Positions 3,458 to 55,651 of a stretch of DNA of 64,000 nucleotides are shown here, piece after piece. The notes under the pieces are model-generated. The model searched no databases. It worked only from the letters and a program-made list of their open reading frames with translations, and was not told where the DNA came from. The stretch lies in the IMG/VR virus record IMGVR_UViG_3300009703_004110, positions 248,001-312,000 of that record; one strand, given 5' to 3'. The position numbers were made by a program, and so were the translations under genes. Position 1 is the stretch's first letter; each line of letters starts with the position of its first letter.

Positions 3458-3704
3458 TTAGCCTTCCAACATACTTTGTATCCAGCCAATTCTCTACTTC
3501 TTCTACACTTCTGAGATATGTTACCAGAATCTCTACGCTTCTTCCCCATTTTCTTTGGGCATCAAGCTGGCAATATCGAGACTTGGGGTAGCTTCCCCCT
3601 ATGCTCTCTATATGCTTATCACCTGCGTATAGATCTACGGTCCACAAACCTCGTTCATCCAGTCTGGTGACTGCAACTAATTCAGCGTTATCCAACATTT
3701 TCAA
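3435..3704 (-). CDS. Hypothetical protein
   Basis: ORF packed in the operon. Confidence 0.55.
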   Translation of the reverse strand: MKMLDNAELVAVTRLDERGLWTVDLYAGDKHIESIGGSYPKSRYCQLDAQRKWGRSVEILVTYLRSVEEVENWLDTKYVGRLNDDGSKI

Positions 3705-3712
3705 CCTCTTAT

Positions 3713-5014
3713 TTAATAAGTGTTTTTAATACCAATGGCACAACGTACTTTCCCAAGCCCGTCTGCATTTTCTGACCAAGCCGTTCCTATGACTTTCATA
3801 TAGTCTTGGAACGATATATCTTGTGGAGATATGGCAGTGCAATAGTGCCTGCCATTTGAAATTAAAAAGTCTCCATCATTAACTTCACCACTAACCATTA
3901 CTTTGATCTGGCCAGAGAAAGAGAATATCTCTCCGATAAAATTCTCCATATCTCCTACCTCATTACCCACAAGAAAGGCGCTTTTGGTAACAACCATTGG
4001 TGTCCCCGGGCCTTCTTTATAAAACTTATTACCTCTGACATAGCAAATATGTCCTTCTGGTAATCCAAAGAATGGAGCCTGCTCTTCTATAAACTTAGCA
4101 TGTGCGTCACTGATGTTCCATTCTTTTATATCGCCTAATTCGATCCACTCTCCATAATCACCACCGCCAGAGGCGTAAACGGCGCTTCCAGAGTCGCCAA
4201 CCGTTCCTCCGCCGTCAGTTCCACCAACAGTTGTATCCGACTGAAAGGTGACAGTTGAATCAGAATCAGAACCACGAATTCGACCTCTGGTTGTTTGACT
4301 CGCATCTGTGCCAGAAGTAAATCTTGCCCAAACATTAGTTGATCCAGGCTCATTGGCCCTTAATCGTATACGTATTCCATCGGCCTGAGTATCGTCCCAA
4401 TCATTAGCCACATCTAAAACATGACTTGTAGCTCCAGACGTGCTATTCGTGCCATATATCGTTACCATAGTAAGTGGGATCAGATTAACCTGGCCATGAG
4501 ACGCAATACTTGTATTGGCAGAAAAAGATGAAATATCTATATTATAATCAGTCAGTTTTATTACAGAAGCTCCACTTCCACTATCAACAGTATTTGTATG
4601 GGTCGTTTTACTATTTATAATCGTACTAGTTTCCGCTTCTAATTTAACACTTCCACCAGAAGAGTCAAGCTCAATATTGCCCGCAGCGTCTACAGAAATA
4701 TTGTCTGCTGAGTCAATATCTACATTGCCATTTGCATTGATAACTATATTTCCGCCACTCGTTGTAGATAAAGTGAGGGTATTTCCTGCGGTCTGTATAG
4801 TAGTAGCACCCGTTCCAGAGTTCAAACTTAAGAGTGAATCATTAGATATAATGTTATTAACAGTTAACTCACCAGTGACAGTAAGGTCTGTCATTGTACC
4901 ACTGGAAAGCGAAACGGTACCTGCAAGTGTAATAGTATCCGCAGTCAATGTAAGTGCGTTACTACCAGCTACTTCTATATTATGACTTTCTTGATATAGG
5001 TTTCTAGTCGCCAT
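3713..5014 (-). CDS. Tail fibre/spike-like structural protein with a C-terminal intramolecular-chaperone-like (peptidase G2-type) domain
   Basis: Thr/Ser/Gly-rich beta-repeat N-terminus; GGDYGEW...GQIKV...GDFLIS...IGTA. Confidence 0.65.
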   Translation of the reverse strand: MATRNLYQESHNIEVAGSNALTLTADTITLAGTVSLSSGTMTDLTVTGELTVNNIISNDSLLSLNSGTGATTIQTAGNTLTLSTTSGGNIVINANGNVDIDSADNISVDAAGNIELDSSGGSVKLEAETSTIINSKTTHTNTVDSGSGASVIKLTDYNIDISSFSANTSIASHGQVNLIPLTMVTIYGTNSTSGATSHVLDVANDWDDTQADGIRIRLRANEPGSTNVWARFTSGTDASQTTRGRIRGSDSDSTVTFQSDTTVGGTDGGGTVGDSGSAVYASGGGDYGEWIELGDIKEWNISDAHAKFIEEQAPFFGLPEGHICYVRGNKFYKEGPGTPMVVTKSAFLVGNEVGDMENFIGEIFSFSGQIKVMVSGEVNDGDFLISNGRHYCTAISPQDISFQDYMKVIGTAWSENADGLGKVRCAIGIKNTY

Positions 5015-7954: not shown

Positions 7955-8656
7955 CTATGGGGCATTTTTCTGAAAATAGTTTAGTGTCGGCTGAGCTACG
8001 ACAGGTTGCCGAGTCCAATGTTGTGTGGTCTGAACGTGATTCTTGCGAACCCATTTACCAACCCCAACCATTTTACGCCCTTCCTTCTCAAGCCTAATGT
8101 CCTTTAGCTCAGCCGTATGTCTGACCACCAGCCCCTCTCGGGTAGGGCCATAAATAGAAGACAGCCCCGAAAGCCCTGTTACAACTTTTTCGAAAATATC
8201 TTTGCCAGGAAAGGCACCTCGCAGTATAACAGGTACAGTGGGTAGTCTTAAAGCTGATGAAGAAAAGTCTTCTACATCATCCCAAGACCACCAAAAGTCC
8301 AGATCATCATCCCTTACTCCGAAAATCATTAGGTGGGATGGTAATATCGAATACTCAATTGAATGGACTGCGTAGACCCACTCACCAAACACAGAGAGAC
8401 CACTCGGAATGGAGTTTTTCAAACGTGAATGTAATGGCTTTAAGGTGTTAAACGATTTATGCGCTGGAGCACCTGCGTGCGAACGCGCGTATACATCCGT
8501 GCGCGTCAGACACACGTTAGAGCCGTCCATCTTTTCTGTTAATACAACTTCCTCACCCAATAGTACATCTAGATCATCTGCGGTCATAAGGCGATCGTCA
8601 GATGTTGTACCTGGGGAGAACGGAAGGTGCATTGTTCTTGGATATTTTGCAGACAT
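7955..8656 (-). CDS. ATP-dependent RNA ligase family protein
   Basis: KYPRT.HLP.SPG, EKMDGSN, GEW, EGLVVR, KWVR. Confidence 0.85.
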   Translation of the reverse strand: MSAKYPRTMHLPFSPGTTSDDRLMTADDLDVLLGEEVVLTEKMDGSNVCLTRTDVYARSHAGAPAHKSFNTLKPLHSRLKNSIPSGLSVFGEWVYAVHSIEYSILPSHLMIFGVRDDDLDFWWSWDDVEDFSSSALRLPTVPVILRGAFPGKDIFEKVVTGLSGLSSIYGPTREGLVVRHTAELKDIRLEKEGRKMVGVGKWVRKNHVQTTQHWTRQPVVAQPTLNYFQKNAP

Positions 8657-8679
8657 GGCAACCTCCTTTAGATAAAAAT

Positions 8680-8714
8680 GAAGCCGGGACAGTTTTTTAC
8701 TTCTGTCCCGGCTT
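8680..8714. terminator. Stem-loop, probable terminator
   Basis: AAGCCGGGACAG / CTGTCCCGGCTT inverted repeat. Confidence 0.55.
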
Positions 8715-8904
8715 AATCGAAAATGAGATTAGTCAGGATTAGTACGTATATTCTTCAACTTTTTCAACCCTCGTTTAAATCCTTTCTAATGCTACATTGT
8801 GAATCTTTTTTTGATTCTTTTGTTTTTTATTTTTTGTCTATTTCAGTGAGCGACCGGGCTGCCGCTCGATGTATCAGACACTTTATTCGAGCTAGTTTTC
8901 AATC

Positions 8905-9105
8905 TTAATCATCAAGATTGTCGACTAGAAAGTCCCGAAGAGCCCTTGCCTGACGAATGGTAAGACGCATAGAAATATCAGAACGTTCACCGTCCATTGA
9001 AATATCTAGTCGGTTGCTTAGTCGTTGCTTGCGCTTGCTACCAGTGGTTAGATCAACGGAAAACCCGGAATAGGCTTTGCTGGTGGTCTGTAATTCTTTA
9101 TTCAT
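8905..9105 (-). CDS. Hypothetical protein
   Basis: ORF with SD AGGAG. Confidence 0.6.
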   Translation of the reverse strand: MNKELQTTSKAYSGFSVDLTTGSKRKQRLSNRLDISMDGERSDISMRLTIRQARALRDFLVDNLDD

Positions 9106-9385
9106 GTGTTATTTCTCCTTTTGGTTTTAACTCTACACTAATACAAATACCATATTTATTTTTACGCTGTTTCCTGCGCTTTTTCTTATTTGATATTGTA
9201 ATTTTTGGTTCTACTTTTGGAATCTCCAATTTATCTTCGGGGATTCCGCTAAGACTTGCTTGCTTTTTTAATTCCTGACACATGCCTTGGGGCACTAACT
9301 TATTTCGAGCATCAACCCAAAATTCAGTTTCATCTTGAATTACAAAAGCATACTCTGCTCCTTCATATTCAACAACTACTGCCAT
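9098..9385 (-). CDS. Hypothetical protein
   Basis: ORF with SD. Confidence 0.6.
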   Translation of the reverse strand: MAVVVEYEGAEYAFVIQDETEFWVDARNKLVPQGMCQELKKQASLSGIPEDKLEIPKVEPKITISNKKKRRKQRKNKYGICISVELKPKGEITHE

Positions 9386-9397
9386 ACTTCTCCCTTC

Positions 9398-9658
9398 CTA
9401 TCGCTCAAGCCACCCTCTTTCTGGAGCTTGTAGGAAGGTTACGTCGTTTAATCTCGCAGGCACGGTTTCGCCGTTGATATCGGTAAGGACAATAGAAATA
9501 GGACGCTTGGTTGTGCCAACCACAATACCCTTCGTCTTTACTCCTGTTCTGCGATTTCTTACAATCACATTGTCGCCTTTACGGAAGTCATTGATATTAA
9601 AACATTGGAATTCATCCCACGCTCCTCTATCATTCCCTCTTCTCTCATATTTTGCCAT
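9398..9658 (-). CDS. Small SH3/KOW-like protein
   Basis: FRKGDNVIV...KGIVVG. Confidence 0.55.
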   Translation of the reverse strand: MAKYERRGNDRGAWDEFQCFNINDFRKGDNVIVRNRRTGVKTKGIVVGTTKRPISIVLTDINGETVPARLNDVTFLQAPERGWLER

Positions 9659-9755
9659 TTTGTTTCCTTACTACAAGGGTTTCAATTGAATAGGCTACTA
9701 CTCTATTACTCTTTAGTTTTTGTTTTTATCTTAAGCTTTAGAACGGTGACGAACC

Positions 9756-10403
9756 TCATGCCAATCGCTGCTCTAAGACCTTTATTGTCTTGGGATCTTT
9801 TGAATTCAGAATATACACAAGATCATTCTTCGGTAGAAGATACGCCAAAGTGTATTGGACCATACTTGCTTTTGAATCTATAAATCTACGAAGCTTATCA
9901 AGCTTCTTTAGTGTCTCCATATACGTTATTTTTGGTCTGCCATAATCATTATCAAAATATGAAGAACGAACAAAGTCAACAATCTCGTTGTCAAAATAAT
10001 TCTTTTGAATAAAATAAGCAACCAAGTATTGTCTATCATTGAGACATACTCTGTGATAAGACTTTAACTCTCCCATATTTAGGATTATCTTCATATAAGA
10101 CTCTCGCCCGTACTCAGCCTCTATCTTCTCTACAAATTTAGTCCAGTGACTAAAGCGTGCCGATAAAGCCACTGCAAGCATGGCTGCGATATCATGGTCT
10201 AAGTTACCGTCTTCGTCTAGCGGTATATTCGGTTCTGATGCCAACATAAAGTCTTCTCGTAGCGACTTTATCTGCTTTGGCAACTGAGAAGAAGCGGTAT
10301 CAAAGCCTTTTCTTTTGGCTTTAGTCCACTTGACTTTCCCGGCCACAATAGCATCGGCCATAAACATGTGAGCTAACGCATGAGTGTCTAATTCGATTAT
10401 CAT
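9756..10403 (-). CDS. Hypothetical helical protein (paralog family)
   Basis: Ends LPKNDLVYILNSKDPKTIKVLEQRLA. Confidence 0.65.
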   Translation of the reverse strand: MIIELDTHALAHMFMADAIVAGKVKWTKAKRKGFDTASSQLPKQIKSLREDFMLASEPNIPLDEDGNLDHDIAAMLAVALSARFSHWTKFVEKIEAEYGRESYMKIILNMGELKSYHRVCLNDRQYLVAYFIQKNYFDNEIVDFVRSSYFDNDYGRPKITYMETLKKLDKLRRFIDSKASMVQYTLAYLLPKNDLVYILNSKDPKTIKVLEQRLA

Positions 10404-10429
10404 TAAATAATCCAGGTTAAAGGTGATAA

Positions 10430-10600
10430 ACTATCAACTGGATTCAAACCAGTCACAACTCAAGAACGTTCAGTTATGTTCGATTGGTACGAACATGCTT
10501 TGTACGATGATCATTCGTACTCATGGAGATACCCTACTTGTCCGCGCTGTCTCGCTCCCGTCCCACGGCAGCGAAGGTGTTAATACACACTCGTGATAGT
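10430..10600 (-). ncRNA. Expanded tRNA-like RNA (about 171 nt)
   Basis: ACUAUCA/UGAUAGU acceptor-like stem, ACUGG-UUUGAAU-CCAGU T arm, several internal hairpins. Confidence 0.6.
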
Positions 10601-10604
10601 TTAA

Positions 10605-10679
10605 TGGTACTCCGTAGGGGAATTGAACCCCTCTTTCCAGGTTGAGAACCTAGCGTCCTAACCGATAGACGAACGGAGC
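10605..10679 (-). tRNA. tRNA-Glu(CTC)
   Basis: Cloverleaf, loop TTCTCAA, encoded CCA. Confidence 0.93.
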
Positions 10680-10686
10680 ATATAAA

Positions 10687-10761
10687 TGGCACTGAGGACG
10701 GGAGTTGAACCCGCACAGCTTTGGGTGAAAACCAAAGAGACTACCATTATCCTACCTCAGC
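10687..10761 (-). tRNA. tRNA-Glu(TTC)
   Basis: Cloverleaf, loop TTTTCAC, CCA. Confidence 0.88.
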
Positions 10762-10800
10762 ATATTAACGTTCTGCCTTCGGCGGCAAAATCTTTGAAAA

Positions 10801-10892
10801 TGGTACACCCGGTAGGATTCGAACCTACGATGAAGGATCTCTCCTTGCCTGGTTAAGAGCCAGGGGCGATCGGCCTCTCCGCTCACGAGTGC
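10801..10892 (-). tRNA. tRNA with Lys anticodon (CTT) and a long variable arm
   Basis: CCTGG-CTCTTAA-CCAGG; V-arm AAGGA-GAGA-TCCTT; 92 nt; CCA. Confidence 0.85.
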
Positions 10893-10899
10893 ATATAAT

Positions 10900-11244
10900 T
10901 TATAAAAATATATTCATATTGAAGATCAAAAGGTCTGCTACACTACCTTTTATTTCGTCCAAAGCTTCTTCAAGACTAATCATACTAGCTAACAATAAAA
11001 TACCCAAGGCATCATTCTCTTTAATTAAATCTGGTATATGATCTAAGACCTTCTTGTCTTTCATTTTAAATATTTTTAATTCGTCAGGCTTGTCTGTAGA
11101 ATTAATCAAAAATAAGAAGTATGGAGAATTATTAACTATAAAAGTTGTTACCAGCTTAGTGCCACCATTCATTATCTTCTCACCAATCTTGGTAACCTCT
11201 CCAGTACCAAGTAAGCCATCGGCAAGTGACTGTACTTTGATCAT
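10900..11244 (-). CDS. Hypothetical protein, C-terminal-tag family
   Basis: Ends VADLLIFNMNIFL. Confidence 0.6.
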   Translation of the reverse strand: MIKVQSLADGLLGTGEVTKIGEKIMNGGTKLVTTFIVNNSPYFLFLINSTDKPDELKIFKMKDKKVLDHIPDLIKENDALGILLLASMISLEEALDEIKGSVADLLIFNMNIFL

Positions 11245-11295
11245 ATTGCCTTCTATTAATTTATATGTTTTGTGTGAACACTTTAGGAGCTTCTC

Positions 11296-11664
11296 ATGGC
11301 GCAAGTAACACACGTAATTAAATCAGTCTTTAGGACCGTAACCACAACAGGTGGCAACGCAGAAACTGTTTTGGATCTGCTCGGAATGAAGTCTGCTGGA
11401 ATTATCAGGCAGGTTCACGTTAGAGCTTCGTCCGGCGGCGGCGCAAACTTTGAAATAAGTATATTTGATAAAGTAGGTGAAGCAACCAACAGTGAGCACA
11501 TCATATACACCGCATCGGGGCAGTCATATGCAACTGACATTGCAGTCACAGGATACTTTGACACCCAAAGTTCCAAAACAGATGCCGACTTGCATATGAC
11601 TTTAACTCCAGCCTCTGACGGGACTTTTGAAGTTAGAATAGACGTCGAAATTCTAATGGGCTAA
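11296..11664 (+). CDS. Beta-rich hypothetical protein, possibly virion-associated
   Basis: SD AGGAG; rare plus-strand gene. Confidence 0.65.
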   Translation: MAQVTHVIKSVFRTVTTTGGNAETVLDLLGMKSAGIIRQVHVRASSGGGANFEISIFDKVGEATNSEHIIYTASGQSYATDIAVTGYFDTQSSKTDADLHMTLTPASDGTFEVRIDVEILMG

Positions 11665-11668
11665 GATT

Positions 11669-11941
11669 TTAACACATGATATGTGGTTGGGCAGTATCAT
11701 AACCTTCGTCATATCGTTCTTGACCATAACGATAAATTGCGTTATCAAGAGTCATAACCTCGTAACGATAATTCTTACCAAGCCCCATAAAGTTGTCTTC
11801 ACGGATCTTCTTCGTTCTAGTTGCTGCTACTTTCTTGGCCTCATCTTCGGAAATATAAATTTCTTCATATTCATAATCATTAGTGGCGCCACTTCTCGTA
11901 AGAACAATGACATATAGATTATATGGAGTATAAGTAGTCAC
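11669..11941 (-). CDS. Hypothetical protein
   Basis: Shares Y..MTLD with 31428..31655. Confidence 0.6.
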   Translation of the reverse strand: MTTYTPYNLYVIVLTRSGATNDYEYEEIYISEDEAKKVAATRTKKIREDNFMGLGKNYRYEVMTLDNAIYRYGQERYDEGYDTAQPHIMC

Positions 11942-11967
11942 TTTTATTATCCTTAATTAAATTATAA

Positions 11968-12053
11968 TGGTGAGGCGTGATGGAGTCGAACCACCCGAGT
12001 CAAAAGACATCTGGTTTACAGCCAGAACCGCTACCCCTACGGTTTAACACCTC
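11968..12053 (-). tRNA. tRNA-Tyr(GTA)
   Basis: Loop CTGTAAA, long V arm, CCA. Confidence 0.9.
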
Positions 12054-12058
12054 TCGTT

Positions 12059-12090
12059 AAGACCAGTTTATACTGGTCTTTTTTATTTTA
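12059..12090. terminator. Intrinsic terminator-like hairpin
   Basis: AAGACCAGT/ACTGGTCTT followed by a T run. Confidence 0.5.
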
Positions 12091-12095
12091 AGCAA

Positions 12096-12752
12096 TTAAA
12101 CTTTGCCCATACTTTGAGTAAAGAAGATTGCTAAAACTCCAACTATCATCATCAAAAAAGAACTCATAAAGAGTCCGCTAATAATAATGCCTAAGCCAAA
12201 CAAAGTTGATATACCTATCGCTATCTGCCGACCCTTTTCTCCGGGCCAAAAGTGATAACAAAAGGACTTTAATATCCTTCCACCATCCATAGGGTATGCT
12301 GGTATTAAATTAAATACACCAAGGATTATATTAATCGCTAAAGCATATGATAATATTGTAATTGTTGCCCCAGAAAGAAGCGGGGAAGTTATAAATAGGA
12401 AACTGGCCAAAATAATAGCACAAATTATATTGAACGCTGGCCCCGCTATTGAAATTAGGGCCTCTTCTTTTGGGGTCCATGAACCTGAATTTATTACTCT
12501 AGCAATACCACCTAATGCCATAATAGTAATGTCTTTTGTTCTATAACCAAACTTCTCTGCTGCAATAGCGTGAGCTATTTCGTGGCCAATCAAAAATACC
12601 ATCACTAAGGCGAATATACCGGCTCCAAAAAGCAATCCAACTAGTGAAAAATTTGGCATCATTATAAGAAGTAGAAATAGAGCACTCCAGTGAAATTTAA
12701 TAGGAATACCAAATAGTTTCATGCAACCCTCATCTGTTGTAATCATCCTCAA
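12096..12752 (-). CDS. Site-2 protease (M50 family)
   Basis: HEIAH, AGP, NLIPAYPMDGG, TM segments. Confidence 0.92.
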   Translation of the reverse strand: MRMITTDEGCMKLFGIPIKFHWSALFLLLIMMPNFSLVGLLFGAGIFALVMVFLIGHEIAHAIAAEKFGYRTKDITIMALGGIARVINSGSWTPKEEALISIAGPAFNIICAIILASFLFITSPLLSGATITILSYALAINIILGVFNLIPAYPMDGGRILKSFCYHFWPGEKGRQIAIGISTLFGLGIIISGLFMSSFLMMIVGVLAIFFTQSMGKV

Positions 12753-15517: not shown

Positions 15518-17065
15518 TTATCGAACTCCTACCAGTATGTCATAAGCCGACGTGGTTAAAAATTCATCTGCGTCTGCCTGTAAACACAGCTCTTTAAATA
15601 GCTTTTTCGCATCATCATCTTCTGCAACAGATTCTAGAATACTTACTACAAGTTCTGGTGATACAGGCTCTCCAGTGTCTAGAATAGCATTATGTCGCAA
15701 CCACTGCCATACTTGAATGCGTGATATTTCAGCAGTTGCAGCGTCTTCCATTAAATTATTAAGCGGAACACACCCAGAGCCTGAAAGCCAGGCTTTTATA
15801 TATTTATAACCAATTTTAATATTCTTTTCAAGCATTCTTCTTGTACATACACCAACAGGAAACGTCATTAGATCCTGCTCGGAAATGACTCGATTCATAT
15901 TTTTAGAAGTCGATATTTGATTCGGCTGAGGCATATGTTCATCAAAAATATTACGAGCAATCTTAACCAAACCAGGGTGAGCTACCCATGTTCCATCATG
16001 CCCATCTAATACTTCACGTTCTTTATCAATACGGACCTTAATCATTGCTGCTTTATTTGCAGACTTATTATCTTTGATTGGGATCTGCGCAGCCATTCCA
16101 CCCATCGCATGAGCGCCCCTCTTATGACATGTCTGAATAAGAAGTCTGGCATATGAGCGCATAAAGTGATCACTCATTCCTATGTCGTCACGATCAGGAA
16201 ATGGTTCATACGCTCCTAATCTGGTATTCTTTTCTACACTTTTAATTGTACTAAATATATAATCCCAGCGTCCACAGTTTAAACCAACAGAATGATTTCG
16301 CAAAGCGTAAAGAATTTCATGCATTTGGAATGCCGCTGGCAATGTTTCAATTAAAACCGTCGCCCTTATCGACCCATTTGGAATATTAAAGTAATTTTCT
16401 GATCTTGAAAAAATATCATTCCAAAGTTCCGCTTCTCTATAGTGCTCTAATTTTGGCAAATAGAAATAGGGCCTAGTTCCATTGCTTATAAGTTTACTAA
16501 AGTTGTTAGCAAAGTATACTCCAAAATCAAATAATGATGCCGGAACATAATCGGTAAGACCTGTGTCACTATTTGTGAATGTGACGTGCTTTTCTTTTAG
16601 ATGTAATCCGCGAGGTCTTACAAAAAGCGTGGCGGTCTTTTTCTTTAACTTATAAGACCTGCCTTTTGCGTTTTTAAAAGATATCTTTTTATCTACGGCA
16701 TCTTTCAAATTAACTTGACCATTAATACAATTGATCCATGTTGGAGCGTTTGAATCTTCAAAATCAGACATATAAACTTGTGCGCCTGAGTTTAGCGCAT
16801 TAATAACCATCTTCCTAGAAGGAGGGCCGGTAATCTCTACGCGTCTATCAAGTATATCTTCTGGCACATCAGCTACGGTCCAATCAGATTCACGTATTGA
16901 AGCTGTCGAAGCGTCGAAACCACTTATAATAGAGTTTCGACGCTTCGCCATACATTGCTCAATTCTTTCGGTAAATATAATACACAGAAACTTAAGAAAG
17001 TCTGATACTTCGGGCGACAAAACTTTTGCCTGCTCATCTGTTATAACTTCACTAAATTTCAGCAT
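15518..17065 (-). CDS. aceB: Malate synthase A
   Basis: [46 protein letters not shown]. Confidence 0.97.
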
Positions 17066-18692: not shown

Positions 18693-18719
18693 ACCTTGAT
18701 ATTTACTTAAAAATGTTAT

Positions 18720-18908
18720 TTACATTTCTTCCCATAAATCAGCAGCTTCTAATGACTGCTGAAAACTTTCTACTAAGTTTATTGCTTCGTAAAGTTTATC
18801 TATTTGATCTTGGTCAGATAAAACCTCTTCCGGCCGCAACGTATCCGCCGTCAAATAATCCATACCAAAATCCATCGGAGCAGGAAAGAGGCTCCGCATC
18901 TTTTTCAA
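18720..18908 (-). CDS. Hypothetical protein
   Basis: Small ORF. Confidence 0.45.
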   Translation of the reverse strand: MKKMRSLFPAPMDFGMDYLTADTLRPEEVLSDQDQIDKLYEAINLVESFQQSLEAADLWEEM

Positions 18909-19082
18909 ATTTCCAATCCATTATTTTCTCCAATGGTATAACCAAACAGATTCGAACTGTTAACTCCCGGCCTTCCACCCGACGTTTTACCAAGATAGAT
19001 CATGAATCCCATAATCACCATCCTTAAACTACAGTTATAAAAATGAGCATTATACTTTGCAGTGTAGTATAATATACTTGCA

Positions 19083-20839: not shown

Positions 20840-20992
20840 TAAACCTTTCCTTAGAGCTTAATAGAGCATACAAACAATCGCCGCATAACTCGCAATCCTT
20901 ATACTTCCATAAGTCTCTGGTTCTATAGACACAAGGACTGCCGCCTATATTAATCGAGCAAAACATGGGTATAGGGCTATCAGGATCTTCTG

Positions 20993-21018
20993 ATATATAT
21001 ATATATATATATATATAT
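20993..21018. repeat. (AT)13 dinucleotide run
   Basis: Read directly; lies in the 5' end of ORF 20700..21023. Confidence 0.9.
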
Positions 21019-21039
21019 GCCATATACCGTTATAGCCCT

Positions 21040-23724
21040 TTACCCATCCAAAGTTGAAAGACAACGCTTGCATGTTCCATCCGAAAGATCAGAGTATCTC
21101 CAGCACTTGTCACACTTCTCACCTTGATGCCTGCCTACCTTTACTGAGAACTCATGCGAAGCTCCGCCCCAAACATTGATACCCGAAACAATAAAAGCTT
21201 CTGTTAAATCTACATGCTTGGAATAAACAGCTTTTTCGATTTCGCAAGGAGGATCGTTAACCGGAAGGTATAGTGTTACATCCGCCTCTAGAGACTTATT
21301 AAGAACTCCATTAGCTCGTGCCTTTTCAACTTCTTTATTAACAACTTCTCTCATTTCAAAGATTGCATTCCACCTTGGCACAAGTGCCGCATCAAGGTGA
21401 GTATCTTCAGCCTCAGCCCATCCCGCCTGGAACACAGAGTCCCCAAGAAACATCGAACCAAACGTATCCATTTCTGCCCAAACTTCTTCAGATAGATACG
21501 AACATACTGGCGCGATCATTCTAACCATATCCTGTAGGTAATAACAAAATACAGTCTGGACAGATCTACGCGCTACACTATCTGATCTTTCGACATACAA
21601 CCTGTCTTTTGTGATATCCAGATAGAAGGCAGATAGTTTTTGGCGAATAAAATCCATAAGATCACGGTATGCACCATAGAAGTCATATTCGTCATAAGCC
21701 TGGTTAAAGCGTACTTTCAACTCTTCCAACTCATGAAGCATATATCTATCAACTTCATGCATATCTTCTAATGCAACGGAATCTGTTTCGAAATTGAAAT
21801 CGGATAAGTTACCAAGAAAGAACCTGAATGTATTACGAAGTCTTCTATAATTTTCATTAACCTGATTTAGAATTTCATCAGAGATTCTTACGTCAGTTTT
21901 GTAATCTACAGATACTGTCCATAATCTAAGTACGTCTTTATTGTACCTGCTAACAACATCGTCTGGAGAGACCACATTCCCAAGAGACTTACTCATCTTA
22001 CGACCCTTACCATCAACAACAAATCCATGAGTTACAACGGCCTTGTATGGAAGCTCACTATCGCTTGCTACCGCAGTTAGTAAGGAGGTTTGGAACCAGC
22101 CACGATATTGATCGTGACCTTCTAGATATAAGTCTGCATTTGATTTGCCAACTGCTCGGTGTGATACACCAGAGTCGAACCAAACGTCCATGATATCCGT
22201 CTCTTTTTTGAGTGAATCTACAAGTGGGTTACCACGTAGATCATACTCTAAACCAAGGGATAATCTTTCTCCAAGTAATTCTCTTGGTGACCAAGTAAAC
22301 CATACCTCTGTGCCATACTCTTCAAATACTTCGAGCAATCGCGCAAAGATTCTTTGATTATAAAGAGGCTGACCATCGTGATAAAAGACAGGGATTGGTA
22401 CGCCCCAAGCTCTTTGTCGAGAGATACACCAGTCCGGTCTACCAAGAATCATCCCGATCATCTTATCTCTGCCATGGGGCGGATAAAATTCAACTTCTTT
22501 AAGCGAAGCCAATGCCATCACTTCTAAAGTATCTTCTACCTTAACAAACCACTGATTGGTAACTCGAAAAACGATTGGCTTCTTCGTTCTCCAATCATGT
22601 GGATATGAGTGAGTAAAGTCTTCTTCATAGAGGACCGCATTTAGAGACGCACGCACGCGCTTGTCTGCCTTCATATAGAAGTCGCCAGCATATACTCCGG
22701 CGAGATCATTATAGTGACCTCTTTCATCTAAGATGCAATCACTTCCTAATCCGTGTTCTTGTCCGATCCAATAGTCATCTTCACCGTGTCCGGGAGCGAT
22801 ATGAACCAATCCGGTCCCCATTGAGTCGGTAACATGATGCCCAACTACAACAGGACATAGTTCGTTAGAGAATGGATGATAGTATTCTAAGCCTTCAAAG
22901 TCAGTAAATGGCTTTGTACGATAAGAATCTATTTCAAGCTTATCTACAAACTCTGTATAAAGGGCCCTCGCCAATACGTAACTTCTTCCATCATCCAATG
23001 TAAGCAATACGTATGGAACGTCTTTGCCATAAGCAACCGCTCTATTGGCCGGAAGAGTCCATGGTGTTGTAGTCCAGATTACCAGCTTAACTCTTGCAGT
23101 AGTTTCCAACTCGACATAAACCGCCTTAGCGGTCACGTCCTTATATTCAAGCTCTGCTTCAGCTAATGCCGTTTCAGAAGATGGCGACCAATAAACAGGA
23201 CGCTTACCTCTGTAAACATATCCGTTACGAAACATTTCATTAAAAACTCTAAGCTGCTCTCGCTTATATTCTTCATCTAATGTTTCGTATCTATGATCCC
23301 AATCAGCATGGATACCTAAGCTTTGAAACTGACGCTCTTGTTCGTCAACCCACTTACGAGCATACTTCCGGCAAGCAGCACGGACACTACTTCCGCTACT
23401 ATCTGTGGCCTCTTCCGATGCCTTTAGTTCGATTGGAAGTCCGTGAGTATCCCACCCAGGAACAAACGGTGCATTATAACCCTGCATTCTCTTTCGCTTT
23501 AAGATTGCGTCCTTAAGAACCTTATTTAAAGCGTGGCCGATATGGATATTTCCATTGGCATATGGAGGGCCGTCATGTAGGATAAATGACTCCCCGTCTT
23601 TGTTTAATGAGAGATCATAAACTTCTTGTTCGCCCCATAACTCTTCGGTATCAGAAAAGCTCTGATCGCTTGGACGCATCCCAAAGTCTGTCTTAGGAAG
23701 ATTTAGTTTGTGCTTCTTTGACAT
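21040..23724 (-). CDS. ileS: Isoleucyl-tRNA synthetase (type 1)
   Basis: DGPPYANGNIHIGH, WTTTPWTLPAN, DWCISRQR, KMSKS, C-terminal Zn finger. Confidence 0.97.
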   Translation of the reverse strand: MSKKHKLNLPKTDFGMRPSDQSFSDTEELWGEQEVYDLSLNKDGESFILHDGPPYANGNIHIGHALNKVLKDAILKRKRMQGYNAPFVPGWDTHGLPIELKASEEATDSSGSSVRAACRKYARKWVDEQERQFQSLGIHADWDHRYETLDEEYKREQLRVFNEMFRNGYVYRGKRPVYWSPSSETALAEAELEYKDVTAKAVYVELETTARVKLVIWTTTPWTLPANRAVAYGKDVPYVLLTLDDGRSYVLARALYTEFVDKLEIDSYRTKPFTDFEGLEYYHPFSNELCPVVVGHHVTDSMGTGLVHIAPGHGEDDYWIGQEHGLGSDCILDERGHYNDLAGVYAGDFYMKADKRVRASLNAVLYEEDFTHSYPHDWRTKKPIVFRVTNQWFVKVEDTLEVMALASLKEVEFYPPHGRDKMIGMILGRPDWCISRQRAWGVPIPVFYHDGQPLYNQRIFARLLEVFEEYGTEVWFTWSPRELLGERLSLGLEYDLRGNPLVDSLKKETDIMDVWFDSGVSHRAVGKSNADLYLEGHDQYRGWFQTSLLTAVASDSELPYKAVVTHGFVVDGKGRKMSKSLGNVVSPDDVVSRYNKDVLRLWTVSVDYKTDVRISDEILNQVNENYRRLRNTFRFFLGNLSDFNFETDSVALEDMHEVDRYMLHELEELKVRFNQAYDEYDFYGAYRDLMDFIRQKLSAFYLDITKDRLYVERSDSVARRSVQTVFCYYLQDMVRMIAPVCSYLSEEVWAEMDTFGSMFLGDSVFQAGWAEAEDTHLDAALVPRWNAIFEMREVVNKEVEKARANGVLNKSLEADVTLYLPVNDPPCEIEKAVYSKHVDLTEAFIVSGINVWGGASHEFSVKVGRHQGEKCDKCWRYSDLSDGTCKRCLSTLDG

Positions 23725-24295: not shown

Positions 24296-24477
24296 TGGTA
24301 GGGGTTAGAAGACTCGAACTTCTTTGCGCCATAATAGTCCAACTCCAACTTCATGTTGCATATCGATCGCTTTGCAACTTCCATTCTTGCTGAAAACGAG
24401 CCGCCACATCACCCGTTCCTAGGTTGGGTATTGCGCACACTCTTATGGTTCGTTTTACACATATAAACTAAACCCCT
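24296..24477 (-). ncRNA. tRNA-like RNA with an insert of about 100 nt replacing the anticodon loop
   Basis: AGGGGUU/AACCCCU-A-CCA, D stem GUUU/AAAC, T arm AGAAG-UUCGAGU-CUUCU, CCAUAA/UUAUGG stem. Confidence 0.75.
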
Positions 24478-27142: not shown

Positions 27143-27254
27143 TGAAGTCACCAAAGGGACTCGAACCCTCGATCTCAAACGGGGGAGGTCCACCCATCGA
27201 TCGCGCCCAACCAATAGCCCCTTCCTCTCAGGACTAAAGACACCTGCTGATGAC
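27143..27254 (-). ncRNA. Expanded tRNA-like RNA (about 112 nt)
   Basis: GUCAUCA/UGGUGAC stem, GAGGG-UUCGAGU-CCCUU T arm, long G/C-rich arm; ends UCA. Confidence 0.55.
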
Positions 27255-31975: not shown

Positions 31976-32051
31976 TGGTAGCTCTGGTGGGAGTCGAACC
32001 CACACTGTAGCGGTTTTAAGCCGCTTGTCTCTGCCGTTGGACTACAGAGCC
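31976..32051 (-). tRNA. tRNA-Leu(TAA) with a short variable loop
   Basis: AGCGG-CTTAAAA-CCGCT; 76 nt; CCA. Confidence 0.88.
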
Positions 32052-55575: not shown

Positions 55576-55651
55576 TGGCACGCTGTAAGGGATTCGAACC
55601 CTTGACGCGGAGGTCTAGAATCTCCCGCTCTGACCGCTGAGCTAACAGCGC
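55576..55651 (-). tRNA. Amber suppressor tRNA (anticodon CTA)
   Basis: 76-nt cloverleaf; GGAGA-TTCTAGA-CCTCC (A31/C39 mismatch), G73, CCA. Confidence 0.8.

What the first reader, a model, noticed from the sequence alone, without database searches (positions are those of the whole stretch)
10430..10600. 171-nt multi-hairpin RNA with a tRNA-like acceptor/T-arm frame
It follows tRNA-Glu directly. It has a 7-bp terminal stem stacked on a T arm and a D-like GUGU/ACAC hairpin, then extra arms including GUACGA-AUGAUCA-UCGUAC and AUGUUCG-UACCAAU-CGAACAU (both 7-nt loops). There is no encoded CCA. Inference: a tRNA-processed ncRNA, possibly presenting several anticodon-like loops as decoys for host anticodon nucleases.
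Basis: partly seen in the sequence, partly recalled or inferred. Interest (0 to 1): 0.6.

Follow-up and report, generated by a model that had tools for sequence, protein, structure and literature searches.

The report
Orphan tRNA-shaped RNA ending phage tRNA cluster
A 171-base stretch at the end of a jumbo phage's Lys-Glu-Glu tRNA cluster has a real tRNA-like outer frame but cannot read codons. It is most likely a tRNA-derived non-coding RNA like phage T4's species 1 RNA, but nothing yet shows it is made or conserved.

Summary
On the minus strand of window 10430-10600, 4 nt after the encoded CCA of tRNA-Glu(CUC), lies a 171-nt element. It has an all-Watson-Crick 7-bp terminal stem (10 bp with its flanks) that abuts a 5-bp T arm with loop UUUGAAU. 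A 4-bp D-like hairpin and a 5-bp stem sit at the canonical tRNA positions 11-24 and 27-31. That anticodon-position stem closes a 13-nt capped loop instead of a 7-nt anticodon loop. A 98-nt insertion with two or three hairpins fills the variable region, and no CCA is encoded.

Such a frame next to a tRNA is very unlikely by chance. Rfam, ARAGORN (introns allowed) and every single-deletion variant fail to call it a tRNA.

It is one of four aberrant tRNA-like genes in this 332-kb subsurface jumbo phage. The nearest relative has at least five, including tRNA-like genes with a truncated or expanded anticodon arm.

The closest known analogue is T4 species 1 RNA (rnaC): same position in the cluster and the same T arm plus terminal stem, but no sequence homology.

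No homologue of the element was found, so covariation could not be tested. No RNA run holds the sequence, so expression could not be tested. The anticodon-decoy idea has no support: the two 7-nt loops are not anticodon-like (A33 in one, C37 in the other).

The parts
10430..10600 (-). The whole 171-nt tRNA-frame element (el1). RNA position p corresponds to window coordinate 10601-p.
10594..10600 (-). 5' strand of the acceptor-like stem, ACUAUCA (RNA 1-7). Pairing extends 3 bp further into 10601-10603.
   Evidence: perfect 10-bp inverted repeat I8
10577..10590 (-). D-like hairpin GUGU-GUAUUA-ACAC (RNA 11-24). The loop has no GG.
   Evidence: pair probability 0.78
10551..10575 (-). Hairpin at the anticodon-arm position (RNA 26-50). 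Stem UCGCU/AGCGA sits at canonical 27-31 but closes a capped 13-nt loop (CCGU-GGG-ACGG) with no 7-nt anticodon loop.
   Evidence: 0.87-1.0
10502..10520 (-). Hairpin GUACGA-AUGAUCA-UCGUAC (RNA 81-99). The loop contains the palindrome UGAUCA.
   Evidence: 0.9-0.99
10476..10496 (-). Hairpin AUGUUCG-UACCAAU-CGAACAU (RNA 105-125). It is an alternative to 56-62/106-112.
   Evidence: about 0.48
10454..10478 (-). Variable-arm-like hairpin CAUAACU...AGUUGUG (RNA 123-147) abutting the T arm. It is mutually exclusive with the previous hairpin.
   Evidence: about 0.55
10437..10453 (-). T arm ACUGG-UUUGAAU-CCAGU (RNA 148-164).
   Evidence: 0.92-1.0
10430..10436 (-). 3' strand of the acceptor-like stem, UGAUAGU (RNA 165-171). 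It is followed by U-UAU, with no CCA.
10605..10892 (-). Upstream tRNA cluster, probably co-transcribed: tRNA-Lys(CUU) 10801-10892, tRNA-Glu(UUC) 10687-10761, tRNA-Glu(CUC) 10605-10679. All three encode CCA.
9756..10403 (-). Downstream 215-aa ORF of unknown function. Its start codon lies 26 nt after the element.

Best explanation
The element is a tRNA-derived RNA gene that can no longer decode. It is the last unit of a Lys-Glu-Glu tRNA transcript.

It keeps the parts of a tRNA that the processing machinery reads. The 7-bp acceptor stem stacked on the 5-bp T arm forms the 12-bp minihelix that RNase P measures, and the same minihelix is the substrate for 3' processing enzymes and CCA-adding enzymes.

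The anticodon arm is capped, and the variable region has grown to 98 nt with two or three hairpins.

Inferred steps:
- RNase P cuts at or within a few nucleotides of window 10600.
- An endonuclease, or exonucleolytic trimming, sets the 3' end near 10429 and separates the RNA from the downstream mRNA.
- A CCA-adding enzyme may complete the end. The phage has a class II nucleotidyltransferase head-domain protein of its own.

The product would be a stable RNA of about 172-175 nt, a tRNA mimic of the kind typified by T4 species 1 RNA (rnaC). Its trans function is unknown. I rank occupying tRNA-binding factors through its acceptor/T-arm end, and serving as a processing mark for the downstream mRNA, above display of anticodon decoys.

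Shown: the structure, its placement and its non-randomness. Inferred: transcription, processing and function.
For: - The frame, its spacing and its pair probabilities.
- Same strand as the preceding tRNA and 4 nt after its CCA. The cluster is tightly packed: 7, 39, 7, 4 and 26 nt between successive units.
- No promoter-like site and no convincing terminator between the cluster and the next ORF; the only terminator-like call there is the element's own T arm.
- The frame next to a tRNA is far beyond chance.
- It does not stand alone. Three further aberrant tRNA-like genes lie on the same strand of the window: 24296-24477, 3 nt after tRNA-Gly and with CCA; 18937-19038; and 27147-27254.
- The closest relative has several tRNA-like genes with a truncated or expanded anticodon arm, set in a tRNA array.
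- T4 rnaC folds with a canonical T arm plus a terminal stem and is the last gene of the T4 tRNA cluster, 6 nt after rnaD.
- PMC2330249 states that one primary transcript of about 1.75 kb is the precursor of the eight T4 tRNAs and of species I and II RNAs.
- The phage encodes a PolyA_pol head-domain protein. An RNA ligase gene lies 1.8 kb downstream.
Against: - No homologue was found anywhere: GenBank phages, IMG/VR pattern scan, 27 related jumbo-phage records searched with a covariance model, and metagenome contigs, which returned only the source contig. There is therefore no covariation and no sign of purifying selection.
- The closest relative has the downstream gene but neither this tRNA cluster nor the element at that place.
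- No RNA data exist.
- The z-score of the fold is modest (-2.0).
- The terminal helix runs 3 bp past the acceptor, so position -1 is paired. This could shift or hinder RNase P cleavage.
- C8, U56 and a D loop without GG depart from the tRNA core.
Confidence: 0.5

Rival explanations
1. It is a decaying tRNA relic with no function of its own: a former tRNA, possibly a type-II-like tRNA with anticodon CCA, that took up an insertion of about 81 nt and is drifting.
For: - It is an orphan with no conservation.
- With ARAGORN thresholds lowered to 90%, deleting about RNA 26-105 gives a type-II-like 'tRNA-Trp(CCA)'. The 3' 86 nt alone are also called this way at 80%.
- The genome has no tRNA-Trp.
- The tRNA content of this region turns over quickly between relatives.
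Against: - All helices are perfect: a 10-bp terminal stem, a 5-bp T stem, and 6-, 7- and 10-bp hairpins. Neutral decay should have broken them.
- The putative anticodon loop has A33.
- No deletion variant passes ARAGORN's default threshold.
- The element is retained in a tightly packed cluster.
Confidence: 0.22
2. It acts mainly in cis, as a tRNA-like processing mark. RNase P/Z-type cleavage at its ends separates the tRNA cluster from the downstream mRNA, as plant mitochondrial t-elements do (this comparison rests on my own knowledge). The released RNA would have no further role.
For: - The start codon of the 215-aa ORF lies 26 nt after the element.
- There is no promoter-like site and no convincing terminator in between.
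- The acceptor/T minihelix is intact while the decoding parts are not.
Against: - The tRNA-Glu just upstream would already provide a processing site.
- The 98-nt insert with stable hairpins is unnecessary for that role.
- The relative's orthologous gene has no such element.
Confidence: 0.12
3. One reading: the hairpins with 7-nt loops mimic anticodon stem-loops and act as decoys for host anticodon nucleases.
For: - Two hairpins have 7-nt loops.
- The neighbouring Lys and Glu tRNAs are classic nuclease targets (my own knowledge).
- An RNA ligase gene lies at 7955-8656.
- Phage tRNAs are known to counter tRNA-targeting defences (PMC10264068, PMC11464382, PMC11555353; titles and abstracts seen).
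Against: - Loop UACCAAU has A33 and loop AUGAUCA has C37.
- Neither loop matches any anticodon loop of the phage's 25 tRNAs.
- One hairpin is only about 48% populated.
- The true anticodon-position hairpin is capped.
- None of the papers returned by the paper searches describes a multi-loop decoy RNA.
Confidence: 0.07
4. It is an interrupted but functional tRNA gene, whose insert is removed to give a decoding tRNA.
For: - Other long tRNA-like genes in this phage and its relatives do become callable tRNAs after one deletion. Some keep a helix at the anticodon-stem position enclosing the insert, for example el2, where CCAUAA/UUAUGG encloses 108 nt.
- An RNA ligase is encoded nearby.
Against: - For this element no deletion yields a tRNA at default thresholds.
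- At about 81-98 nt the insert is shorter than any group I intron I know of, and Rfam reports no intron or ribozyme match.
- The phage has no tRNA-splicing endonuclease and no RtcB.
- The inserts of the different long elements share no core.
Confidence: 0.05
5. It is not an RNA gene. Three alternatives: a chance inverted repeat, a small mobile element with 10-bp terminal inverted repeats, or the 57-aa ORF on the plus strand (10423-10596).
For: - A perfect 10-bp inverted repeat lies at the ends.
- An open frame of 57 codons overlaps the element on the other strand.
Against: - There is no second copy in the genome.
- The T arm with a T-loop motif directly abuts the stem, in tRNA register with the D-like and 27-31 stems.
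- The ORF has no family match and lies antisense to all neighbouring genes. A 57-codon open frame is expected by chance in one of six frames about a third of the time.
Confidence: 0.04

Closest known systems
Phage T4 species 1 RNA (rnaC); with rnaD, the 'small stable RNAs' of the T4 tRNA cluster
   Same: - It is the last gene of a phage tRNA cluster, a few nucleotides after the preceding RNA gene and on the same strand.
- It is 139 nt long, against 171 nt here.
- It folds with a canonical T arm (CCGGG-UUCGAAU-CCCGG) directly followed by the 3' strand of a terminal stem, with extra hairpins in between and no anticodon arm.
- It is made from the same primary transcript as the tRNAs (PMC2330249).
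- Its function is still unknown.
   Different: - There is no sequence or covariance-model similarity.
- T4's terminal stem has two U-U mismatches, while this one is perfect.
- This element keeps D-like and 27-31 stems in tRNA register.
- T4 RNA is known to accumulate; for this element nothing is known.
Canonical tRNA (Rfam RF00005), including type II tRNAs with a long variable arm
   Same: - A 7-bp acceptor, a 2-nt linker, a 4-bp D stem, a 5-bp stem at positions 27-31, and a 5-bp T stem with G53-C61 and a 7-nt T loop.
- A hairpin abuts the T arm like a long variable arm.
   Different: - There is no 7-nt anticodon loop at the anticodon position.
- The variable region is 98 nt.
- No CCA is encoded, while all 25 tRNAs of the genome encode it.
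- C8, U56 and a D loop without G18/G19.
- It is not detected by Rfam or ARAGORN.
tRNA-like processing signals: plant mitochondrial t-elements and mascRNA of MALAT1 (named from my own knowledge; the Rfam mascRNA model was scanned)
   Same: An acceptor/T-arm mimic without decoding capacity, placed next to another transcript's end.
   Different: - Those are eukaryotic or organellar and are tRNA-sized or smaller.
- There is no Rfam match to the element itself. The only weak mascRNA hit lies in the T arm of tRNA-Glu.
Bacterial Y RNA (YrlA) tRNA mimics (PMC4201824)
   Same: A non-coding RNA of similar size with a tRNA-like module. Some are phage-encoded.
   Different: - In YrlA the RNA ends lie at the anticodon side and bind Ro (my own knowledge). 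Here the ends form the acceptor stem.
- The genome has no Ro/TROVE gene.
- There is no Rfam hit.
tmRNA
   Same: An acceptor stem plus T arm frames a long insert. Relatives of this phage encode tmRNA.
   Different: - There is no G3-U70 pair.
- The only internal open frame does not end in an LAA-type tag.
- At 171 nt it is far too short.
- Neither ARAGORN nor Rfam calls it.

Membership tests
tRNA (RF00005 / ARAGORN) | Score above the family threshold with a full cloverleaf | tested here: not met
   There is no RF00005 match to 10430-10600 even at E <= 10 in a 351-nt search. ARAGORN does not call it, with or without anticodon-loop introns.
tRNA (RF00005 / ARAGORN) | A 7-nt anticodon loop with U33 and a purine at 37, on a 5-bp stem at positions 27-43 | tested here: not met
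   The stem at 27-31/45-49 closes a 13-nt self-paired loop. The other 7-nt loops have A33 or C37.
tRNA (RF00005 / ARAGORN) | A 7-bp acceptor stacked on a 5-bp T arm with a T-loop motif | tested here: met
   ACUAUCA/UGAUAGU plus ACUGG-UUUGAAU-CCAGU, with pair probabilities mostly 0.9-1.0.
Intron-containing tRNA (group I or bulge-helix-bulge type) | Removing one contiguous insert restores a tRNA | tested here: not met
   No deletion variant is called at default thresholds. The only call is a weak 'Trp(CCA)' with A33 at 90% thresholds.
Intron-containing tRNA (group I or bulge-helix-bulge type) | A splicing apparatus or a self-splicing ribozyme is present | tested here: not met
   There is no Rfam intron or ribozyme match. 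The phage genome has no tRNA_int_endo and no RtcB. Host enzymes are unknown.
T4 rnaC-type stable RNA of phage tRNA clusters | Encoded at the 3' end of a tRNA cluster, same strand, a few nucleotides from the preceding RNA gene | tested here: met
T4 rnaC-type stable RNA of phage tRNA clusters | A T arm plus terminal stem enclosing non-tRNA hairpins | tested here: met
   for the element and for T4 rnaC.
T4 rnaC-type stable RNA of phage tRNA clusters | Sequence or structure homology to rnaC | tested here: not met
   Model R1 gives no match in the T4 tRNA region at E <= 10.
T4 rnaC-type stable RNA of phage tRNA clusters | Accumulates as a discrete RNA processed from the tRNA precursor | not testable with these tools
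   Only two DNA runs hold the sequence and no RNA run does.
tmRNA | G3-U70 in the acceptor, a tag reading frame, pseudoknots, a family score | tested here: not met
   The acceptor pairs are A-U, C-G and U-A. There is no ARAGORN or Rfam tmRNA call.
YrlA / Y RNA | A Ro (TROVE) partner gene and a Ro-binding stem formed by the RNA ends | tested here: not met
   There is no TROVE match in the 332-kb genome, while the control genomes ring. There is no Rfam hit.

The most novel reading that the evidence does not exclude
The element is one member of an undescribed class of phage RNAs. In a clade of subsurface jumbo phages, tRNA genes have been remodelled into non-decoding RNAs that keep the acceptor/T-arm end but delete, cap or greatly expand the anticodon or variable domain. 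These RNAs would be matured by the tRNA machinery and would work in trans, for example by soaking up host tRNA-directed defence or modification enzymes, or by carrying a display domain on a tRNA chassis.
Probability: 0.15. Interest if true: 0.7.

Novelty: new variant of a known kind. Interest (0 to 1): 0.4.

Why it matters
Phage tRNAs are now understood partly as countermeasures to host tRNA-cleaving defences. The tRNA-shaped stable RNAs of T4 have lacked a function for fifty years.

This element, with the other aberrant tRNA-like genes found here in this phage and its relatives, would show that jumbo phages repeatedly turn tRNA genes into non-decoding RNAs that standard tRNA finders miss. That would give new material for asking what such RNAs do.

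As it stands it is a single orphan sequence with no expression or conservation evidence, so its value is as a lead.

Tried and rejected
**Homologue searches, all empty**
- blastn of the element against 50,697 GenBank phages gave only chance-level matches.
- An exact T-arm/acceptor pattern in IMG/VR found nothing.
- The neighbouring 215-aa protein found nothing in IMG/VR. In the metagenome collection it found only the source contig.
- A single-sequence covariance model, R1, found nothing at E <= 1 in 27 related jumbo-phage records reached through the RNA ligase. It also found nothing in the T4 tRNA region or in three 15-20-kb stretches of the closest relative, including its tRNA-like array.
- blastn of all four long elements against the related loci gave noise.

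**Rfam.** No family matches, at gathering scores or at E <= 10.

**Reads.** Only two DNA runs of a subsurface metagenome hold the stretch. Laying them confirmed the assembly and nothing more.

**Interrupted-tRNA test.** All single deletions run through ARAGORN were negative for this element.

**Partner genes.** Ro/TROVE, tRNA-splicing endonuclease and RtcB are absent from the genome.

**Common core among inserts.** Aligning six long elements showed only the T loop conserved.

**Parent tRNA.** No tRNA of the genome stands out as the source.

**Neighbouring proteins.** No Pfam, PHROG or Atlas lead.

**Mini-tmRNA.** An internal 16-codon AUG...UAA frame was considered and rejected: no G3-U70 and no LAA-type ending.

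**Not used.** The large protein searches, structure prediction and complex prediction were not relevant to an RNA element. No alternative genetic code was used.

Full report
**Setting**

The window is bases 248001-312000 of a 332,270-bp IMG/VR virus record with 39.7% G+C. The record was cut from a 391-kb contig of a subsurface metagenome.

ARAGORN finds 25 tRNA genes in the record. All but one lie on the minus strand, and that one overlaps tRNA-Gln(UUG) on the opposite strand. They are scattered among minus-strand ORFs over the last 75 kb, and 24 of them encode CCA (the doubtful antisense call does not).

The record's relatives are jumbo phages of 200-480 kb, some with direct terminal repeats. 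I therefore treat it as a jumbo phage of an unknown bacterial host.

**The observation**

Read on the minus strand, the order of units is as follows:
- the stop codon of a 137-aa ORF at 10900, then 7 nt;
- tRNA-Lys(CUU) at 10892-10801, then 39 nt;
- tRNA-Glu(UUC) at 10761-10687, then 7 nt;
- tRNA-Glu(CUC) at 10679-10605, then 4 nt;
- the element at 10600-10430, then 26 nt;
- the ATG of a 215-aa ORF at 10403.

- Terminal stem: ACUAUCA/UGAUAGU forms seven Watson-Crick pairs.
- T arm: ACUGG-UUUGAAU-CCAGU abuts the stem without a spacer, giving the 12-bp coaxial minihelix of a tRNA.
- D-like hairpin: GUGU/ACAC lies at RNA positions 11-14/21-24.
- Inner hairpins: GUACGA-AUGAUCA-UCGUAC at 81-99 and AUGUUCG-UACCAAU-CGAACAU at 105-125.
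- 3' end: UGAUAGU-U-UAU, with no CCA.

- The 5' part keeps tRNA numbering. After the 7-bp stem come two nucleotides, a 4-bp D stem, one nucleotide, and then a 5-bp stem exactly at positions 27-31 (UCGCU, pairing with AGCGA at 45-49). This stem does not hold a 7-nt anticodon loop. It holds 13 nt that pair with themselves (CCGU-GGG-ACGG).
- The terminal helix is a perfect 10-bp inverted repeat that takes in three flanking nucleotides on each side.
- The second 7-nt-loop hairpin is only about half populated in the predicted ensemble. It competes with a pairing of 56-62 to 106-112 plus a hairpin at 123-147. That hairpin abuts the T arm like the long variable arm of a type II tRNA.

**Is it more than chance?**

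- The fold energy is modestly unusual: z = -2.0, with 5 of 200 shuffles folding as well.
- The frame is more telling. I scanned for a 5-bp T stem with a T-loop motif followed at once by a 7-nt strand whose complement lies 96-260 nt upstream. The scan finds 12 such frames in both strands of the genome, against 5.9 +/- 2.8 in dinucleotide shuffles. With an all-Watson-Crick acceptor it finds 3, against 0.77.
- A frame that begins within 10 nt downstream of one of 25 tRNAs on the same strand is expected about 3e-4 times per genome (my arithmetic).
- A 113-kb contig of the source run covers 8600-12600 without a difference, so this is not an assembly artefact.

**What it is not**

- **Not a known RNA family.** Rfam gives no match, at gathering scores or at E <= 10.
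- **Not a callable tRNA.** ARAGORN does not call it, with or without anticodon-loop introns.
- **Not an interrupted tRNA.** I deleted every contiguous segment that leaves 70-95 nt and ran ARAGORN on each variant. None is called at default thresholds. At 90% of the thresholds, deleting about positions 26-105 gives a type-II-like 'tRNA(CCA)', but its loop UACCAAU has A at position 33.
- **No splicing apparatus.** The phage has no tRNA-splicing endonuclease and no RtcB. The insert is too short for a group I intron.
- **Not a tmRNA.** There is no G3-U70 and no tmRNA call.
- **Not a Y RNA.** The ends are on the wrong side of the fold, and the genome has no Ro gene.
- **Not a repeated element.** There is no second copy in the genome.
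- **Not the plus-strand ORF.** The 57-codon frame over it has no family match and runs against all its neighbours.

**Context that helps: sibling elements**

The same frame scan, ARAGORN with introns allowed, and Rfam reveal three more aberrant tRNA-like genes on the same strand of the window:
- **24296-24477.** This is 178 nt plus ACCA and starts 3 nt after tRNA-Gly(GCC). It has U8, A9, a D arm and a canonical T loop. A helix CCAUAA/UUAUGG at the anticodon-stem position encloses 108 nt and is followed by a 5-nt variable loop.
- **18937-19038.** This is 101 nt plus ACCA. It scores 30.8 bits on the Rfam tRNA model, with a 35-nt insertion in the D loop.
- **27147-27254.** This is 108 nt with no CCA.

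I fetched the closest relative whole. It is a 335-kb record with terminal repeats, and its proteins are 43-63% identical to those here. ARAGORN calls only 9 tRNAs and a tmRNA in it. The Rfam tRNA model finds more tRNA-like genes in an array at 315-319 kb:
- Two are 63-66 nt long, with the anticodon arm cut down to 4-7 nt.
- Two carry 26 or 53 nt in place of the anticodon loop.

My frame scan adds a 153-nt element in the same array. Its 5' part is canonical (U8, A9, a D loop with GG), and neither ARAGORN nor Rfam calls it. It also adds a 181-nt frame at 3569-3749 without CCA.

Two further relatives each have one long tRNA-like gene between tRNAs.

The inserts share no common sequence. So this is a recurring way of remodelling tRNA genes, not one mobile insert.

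The relative has the orthologue of the 215-aa gene but no tRNA cluster before it. The cluster and the element are therefore a recent, lineage-specific acquisition.

**Closest known thing**

In T4 the tRNA cluster ends with two 'small stable RNAs'. These are rnaD (119 nt), 1 nt after tRNA-Arg, and rnaC or species 1 RNA (139 nt), 6 nt after rnaD.

Folded here, rnaC has a canonical T arm (CCGGG-UUCGAAU-CCCGG) followed at once by the 3' strand of a terminal stem. It has long hairpins in between and no anticodon arm.

PMC2330249 states that one primary transcript of about 1.75 kb is the precursor of the eight tRNAs and of species I and II RNAs, and that transcription ends after the species I gene.

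The element here matches rnaC in position, size class and architecture. It does not match in sequence. It works like rnaC as far as anatomy goes, but it is not a homologue.

**How it most likely works**

Shown: the anatomy and the placement.

Inferred from established tRNA biology:
- The acceptor/T minihelix is what RNase P and CCA-adding enzymes recognise. The element should therefore be cut out of the cluster transcript like a tRNA.
- Its 5' end should fall at or near 10600. The paired -1 to -3 positions may shift the cut, as the extra pair does in tRNA-His precursors.
- Its 3' end should fall after the unpaired-discriminator equivalent, near 10429.
- The phage encodes a class II nucleotidyltransferase head-domain protein that could add CCA. 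It also encodes an RNA ligase 1.8 kb downstream.

With no anticodon loop, the product cannot decode.

On what it does in trans I can only rank possibilities:
- a mimic that occupies tRNA-binding factors through its acceptor/T-arm end;
- a processing mark that frees the downstream mRNA;
- a relic.

The loops break the two most conserved rules of anticodon loops (U33 and a purine at 37). They resemble none of the phage's own anticodon loops. One hairpin is not even the dominant fold.

**Limits**

- No RNA run holds the sequence, so accumulation as a discrete RNA is untested.
- The host and its processing enzymes are unknown.
- I used no alternative genetic code. Although a tRNA with anticodon CUA is present, TAG ends 49 of 273 long ORFs, and reading through it gains less than reading through the other stops.

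**Verdict**

- It is a new variant of a known kind: the tRNA-shaped stable RNAs of phage tRNA clusters.
- Interest is moderate. It would rise if the wider set of remodelled tRNA-like genes in these phages proves to be expressed.

Noticed in passing
window 24296-24477 (-): A second long tRNA-like gene starts 3 nt after tRNA-Gly(GCC). It is 178 nt plus an encoded ACCA, with U8, A9, a D arm and T loop UUCGAGU. A helix CCAUAA/UUAUGG at the anticodon-stem position encloses 108 nt. ARAGORN calls it only as 'tRNA-Ile(AAT) with an 89-nt intron'. Rfam does not see it.
   Followed up: partly
window 18937-19038 (-) and 27147-27254 (-): Two more aberrant tRNA-like frames. The first is 101 nt plus ACCA, with a 35-nt insertion in the D loop and an 8-nt anticodon-region loop (Rfam tRNA 30.8 bits). 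The second is 108 nt, G+C-rich, without CCA, and no deletion makes it callable as a tRNA.
   Followed up: partly
window 10801-10892 (-), 31976-32051 (-); G000:318040-318115: The tRNA with anticodon CUU (Lys) has a type II build: 92 nt, a long variable arm and A73. Both tRNAs with Leu anticodons (UAA, UAG) are 76-nt type I molecules. This is the reverse of the bacterial norm and raises the question of which amino acids they carry.
   Followed up: no
window 55576-55651 (-): A suppressor-type tRNA with anticodon CUA is present. Yet TAG ends 49 of 273 long ORFs, and reading through TAG lengthens ORFs less than reading through TGA or TAA, so there is no sign of genome-wide TAG recoding.
   Followed up: partly
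L049:15768-15830 and 16109-16174 (closest relative, G001 315.8-316.2 kb): Two 63-66-nt tRNA-like genes have intact acceptor, D and T arms, but the anticodon arm is reduced to 4-7 nt (Rfam tRNA 37 and 32 bits). They look like paralogues.
   Followed up: no
L049:18041-18154, 18704-18793; L034:3569-3749; L060:4979-5142 (-); L078:8725-8924: Relatives carry tRNA-like genes with 26-120 nt in place of, or next to, the anticodon loop. Most of them lie between or within tRNA arrays. ARAGORN misses them unless introns are allowed. Their inserts share no common core.
   Followed up: partly
L003:9817-10179; G002:165669-166047: Related jumbo phages encode tmRNA, with tags ending LKLAA and LALAA. None is called in this genome.
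   Followed up: no
window 7955-8656 (-); G000:179355-179723 (-): The phage encodes an RNA ligase (PF09414) 1.8 kb downstream of the tRNA cluster. Elsewhere it encodes a 251-aa protein with a PolyA_pol (CCA-adding-type) head domain. Together these form a possible tRNA repair and maturation kit.
   Followed up: partly
window 20965-21047: An 83-nt near-perfect palindrome is centred on a (TA)n run. It gives weak matches to microRNA hairpin models on both strands.
   Followed up: no
window 10610-10680: In the source sample the tRNA-Glu(CUC) stretch also attracts short contigs of other organisms at very high depth (up to about 3500), with 5-10 differences. These could include the host's tRNA-Glu.
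   Followed up: no
G000:317643-317736: ARAGORN calls two overlapping tRNAs on opposite strands: Arg(UCG) on the plus strand and Gln(UUG) on the minus strand. The plus-strand call is probably the mirror image of the Gln gene.
   Followed up: no
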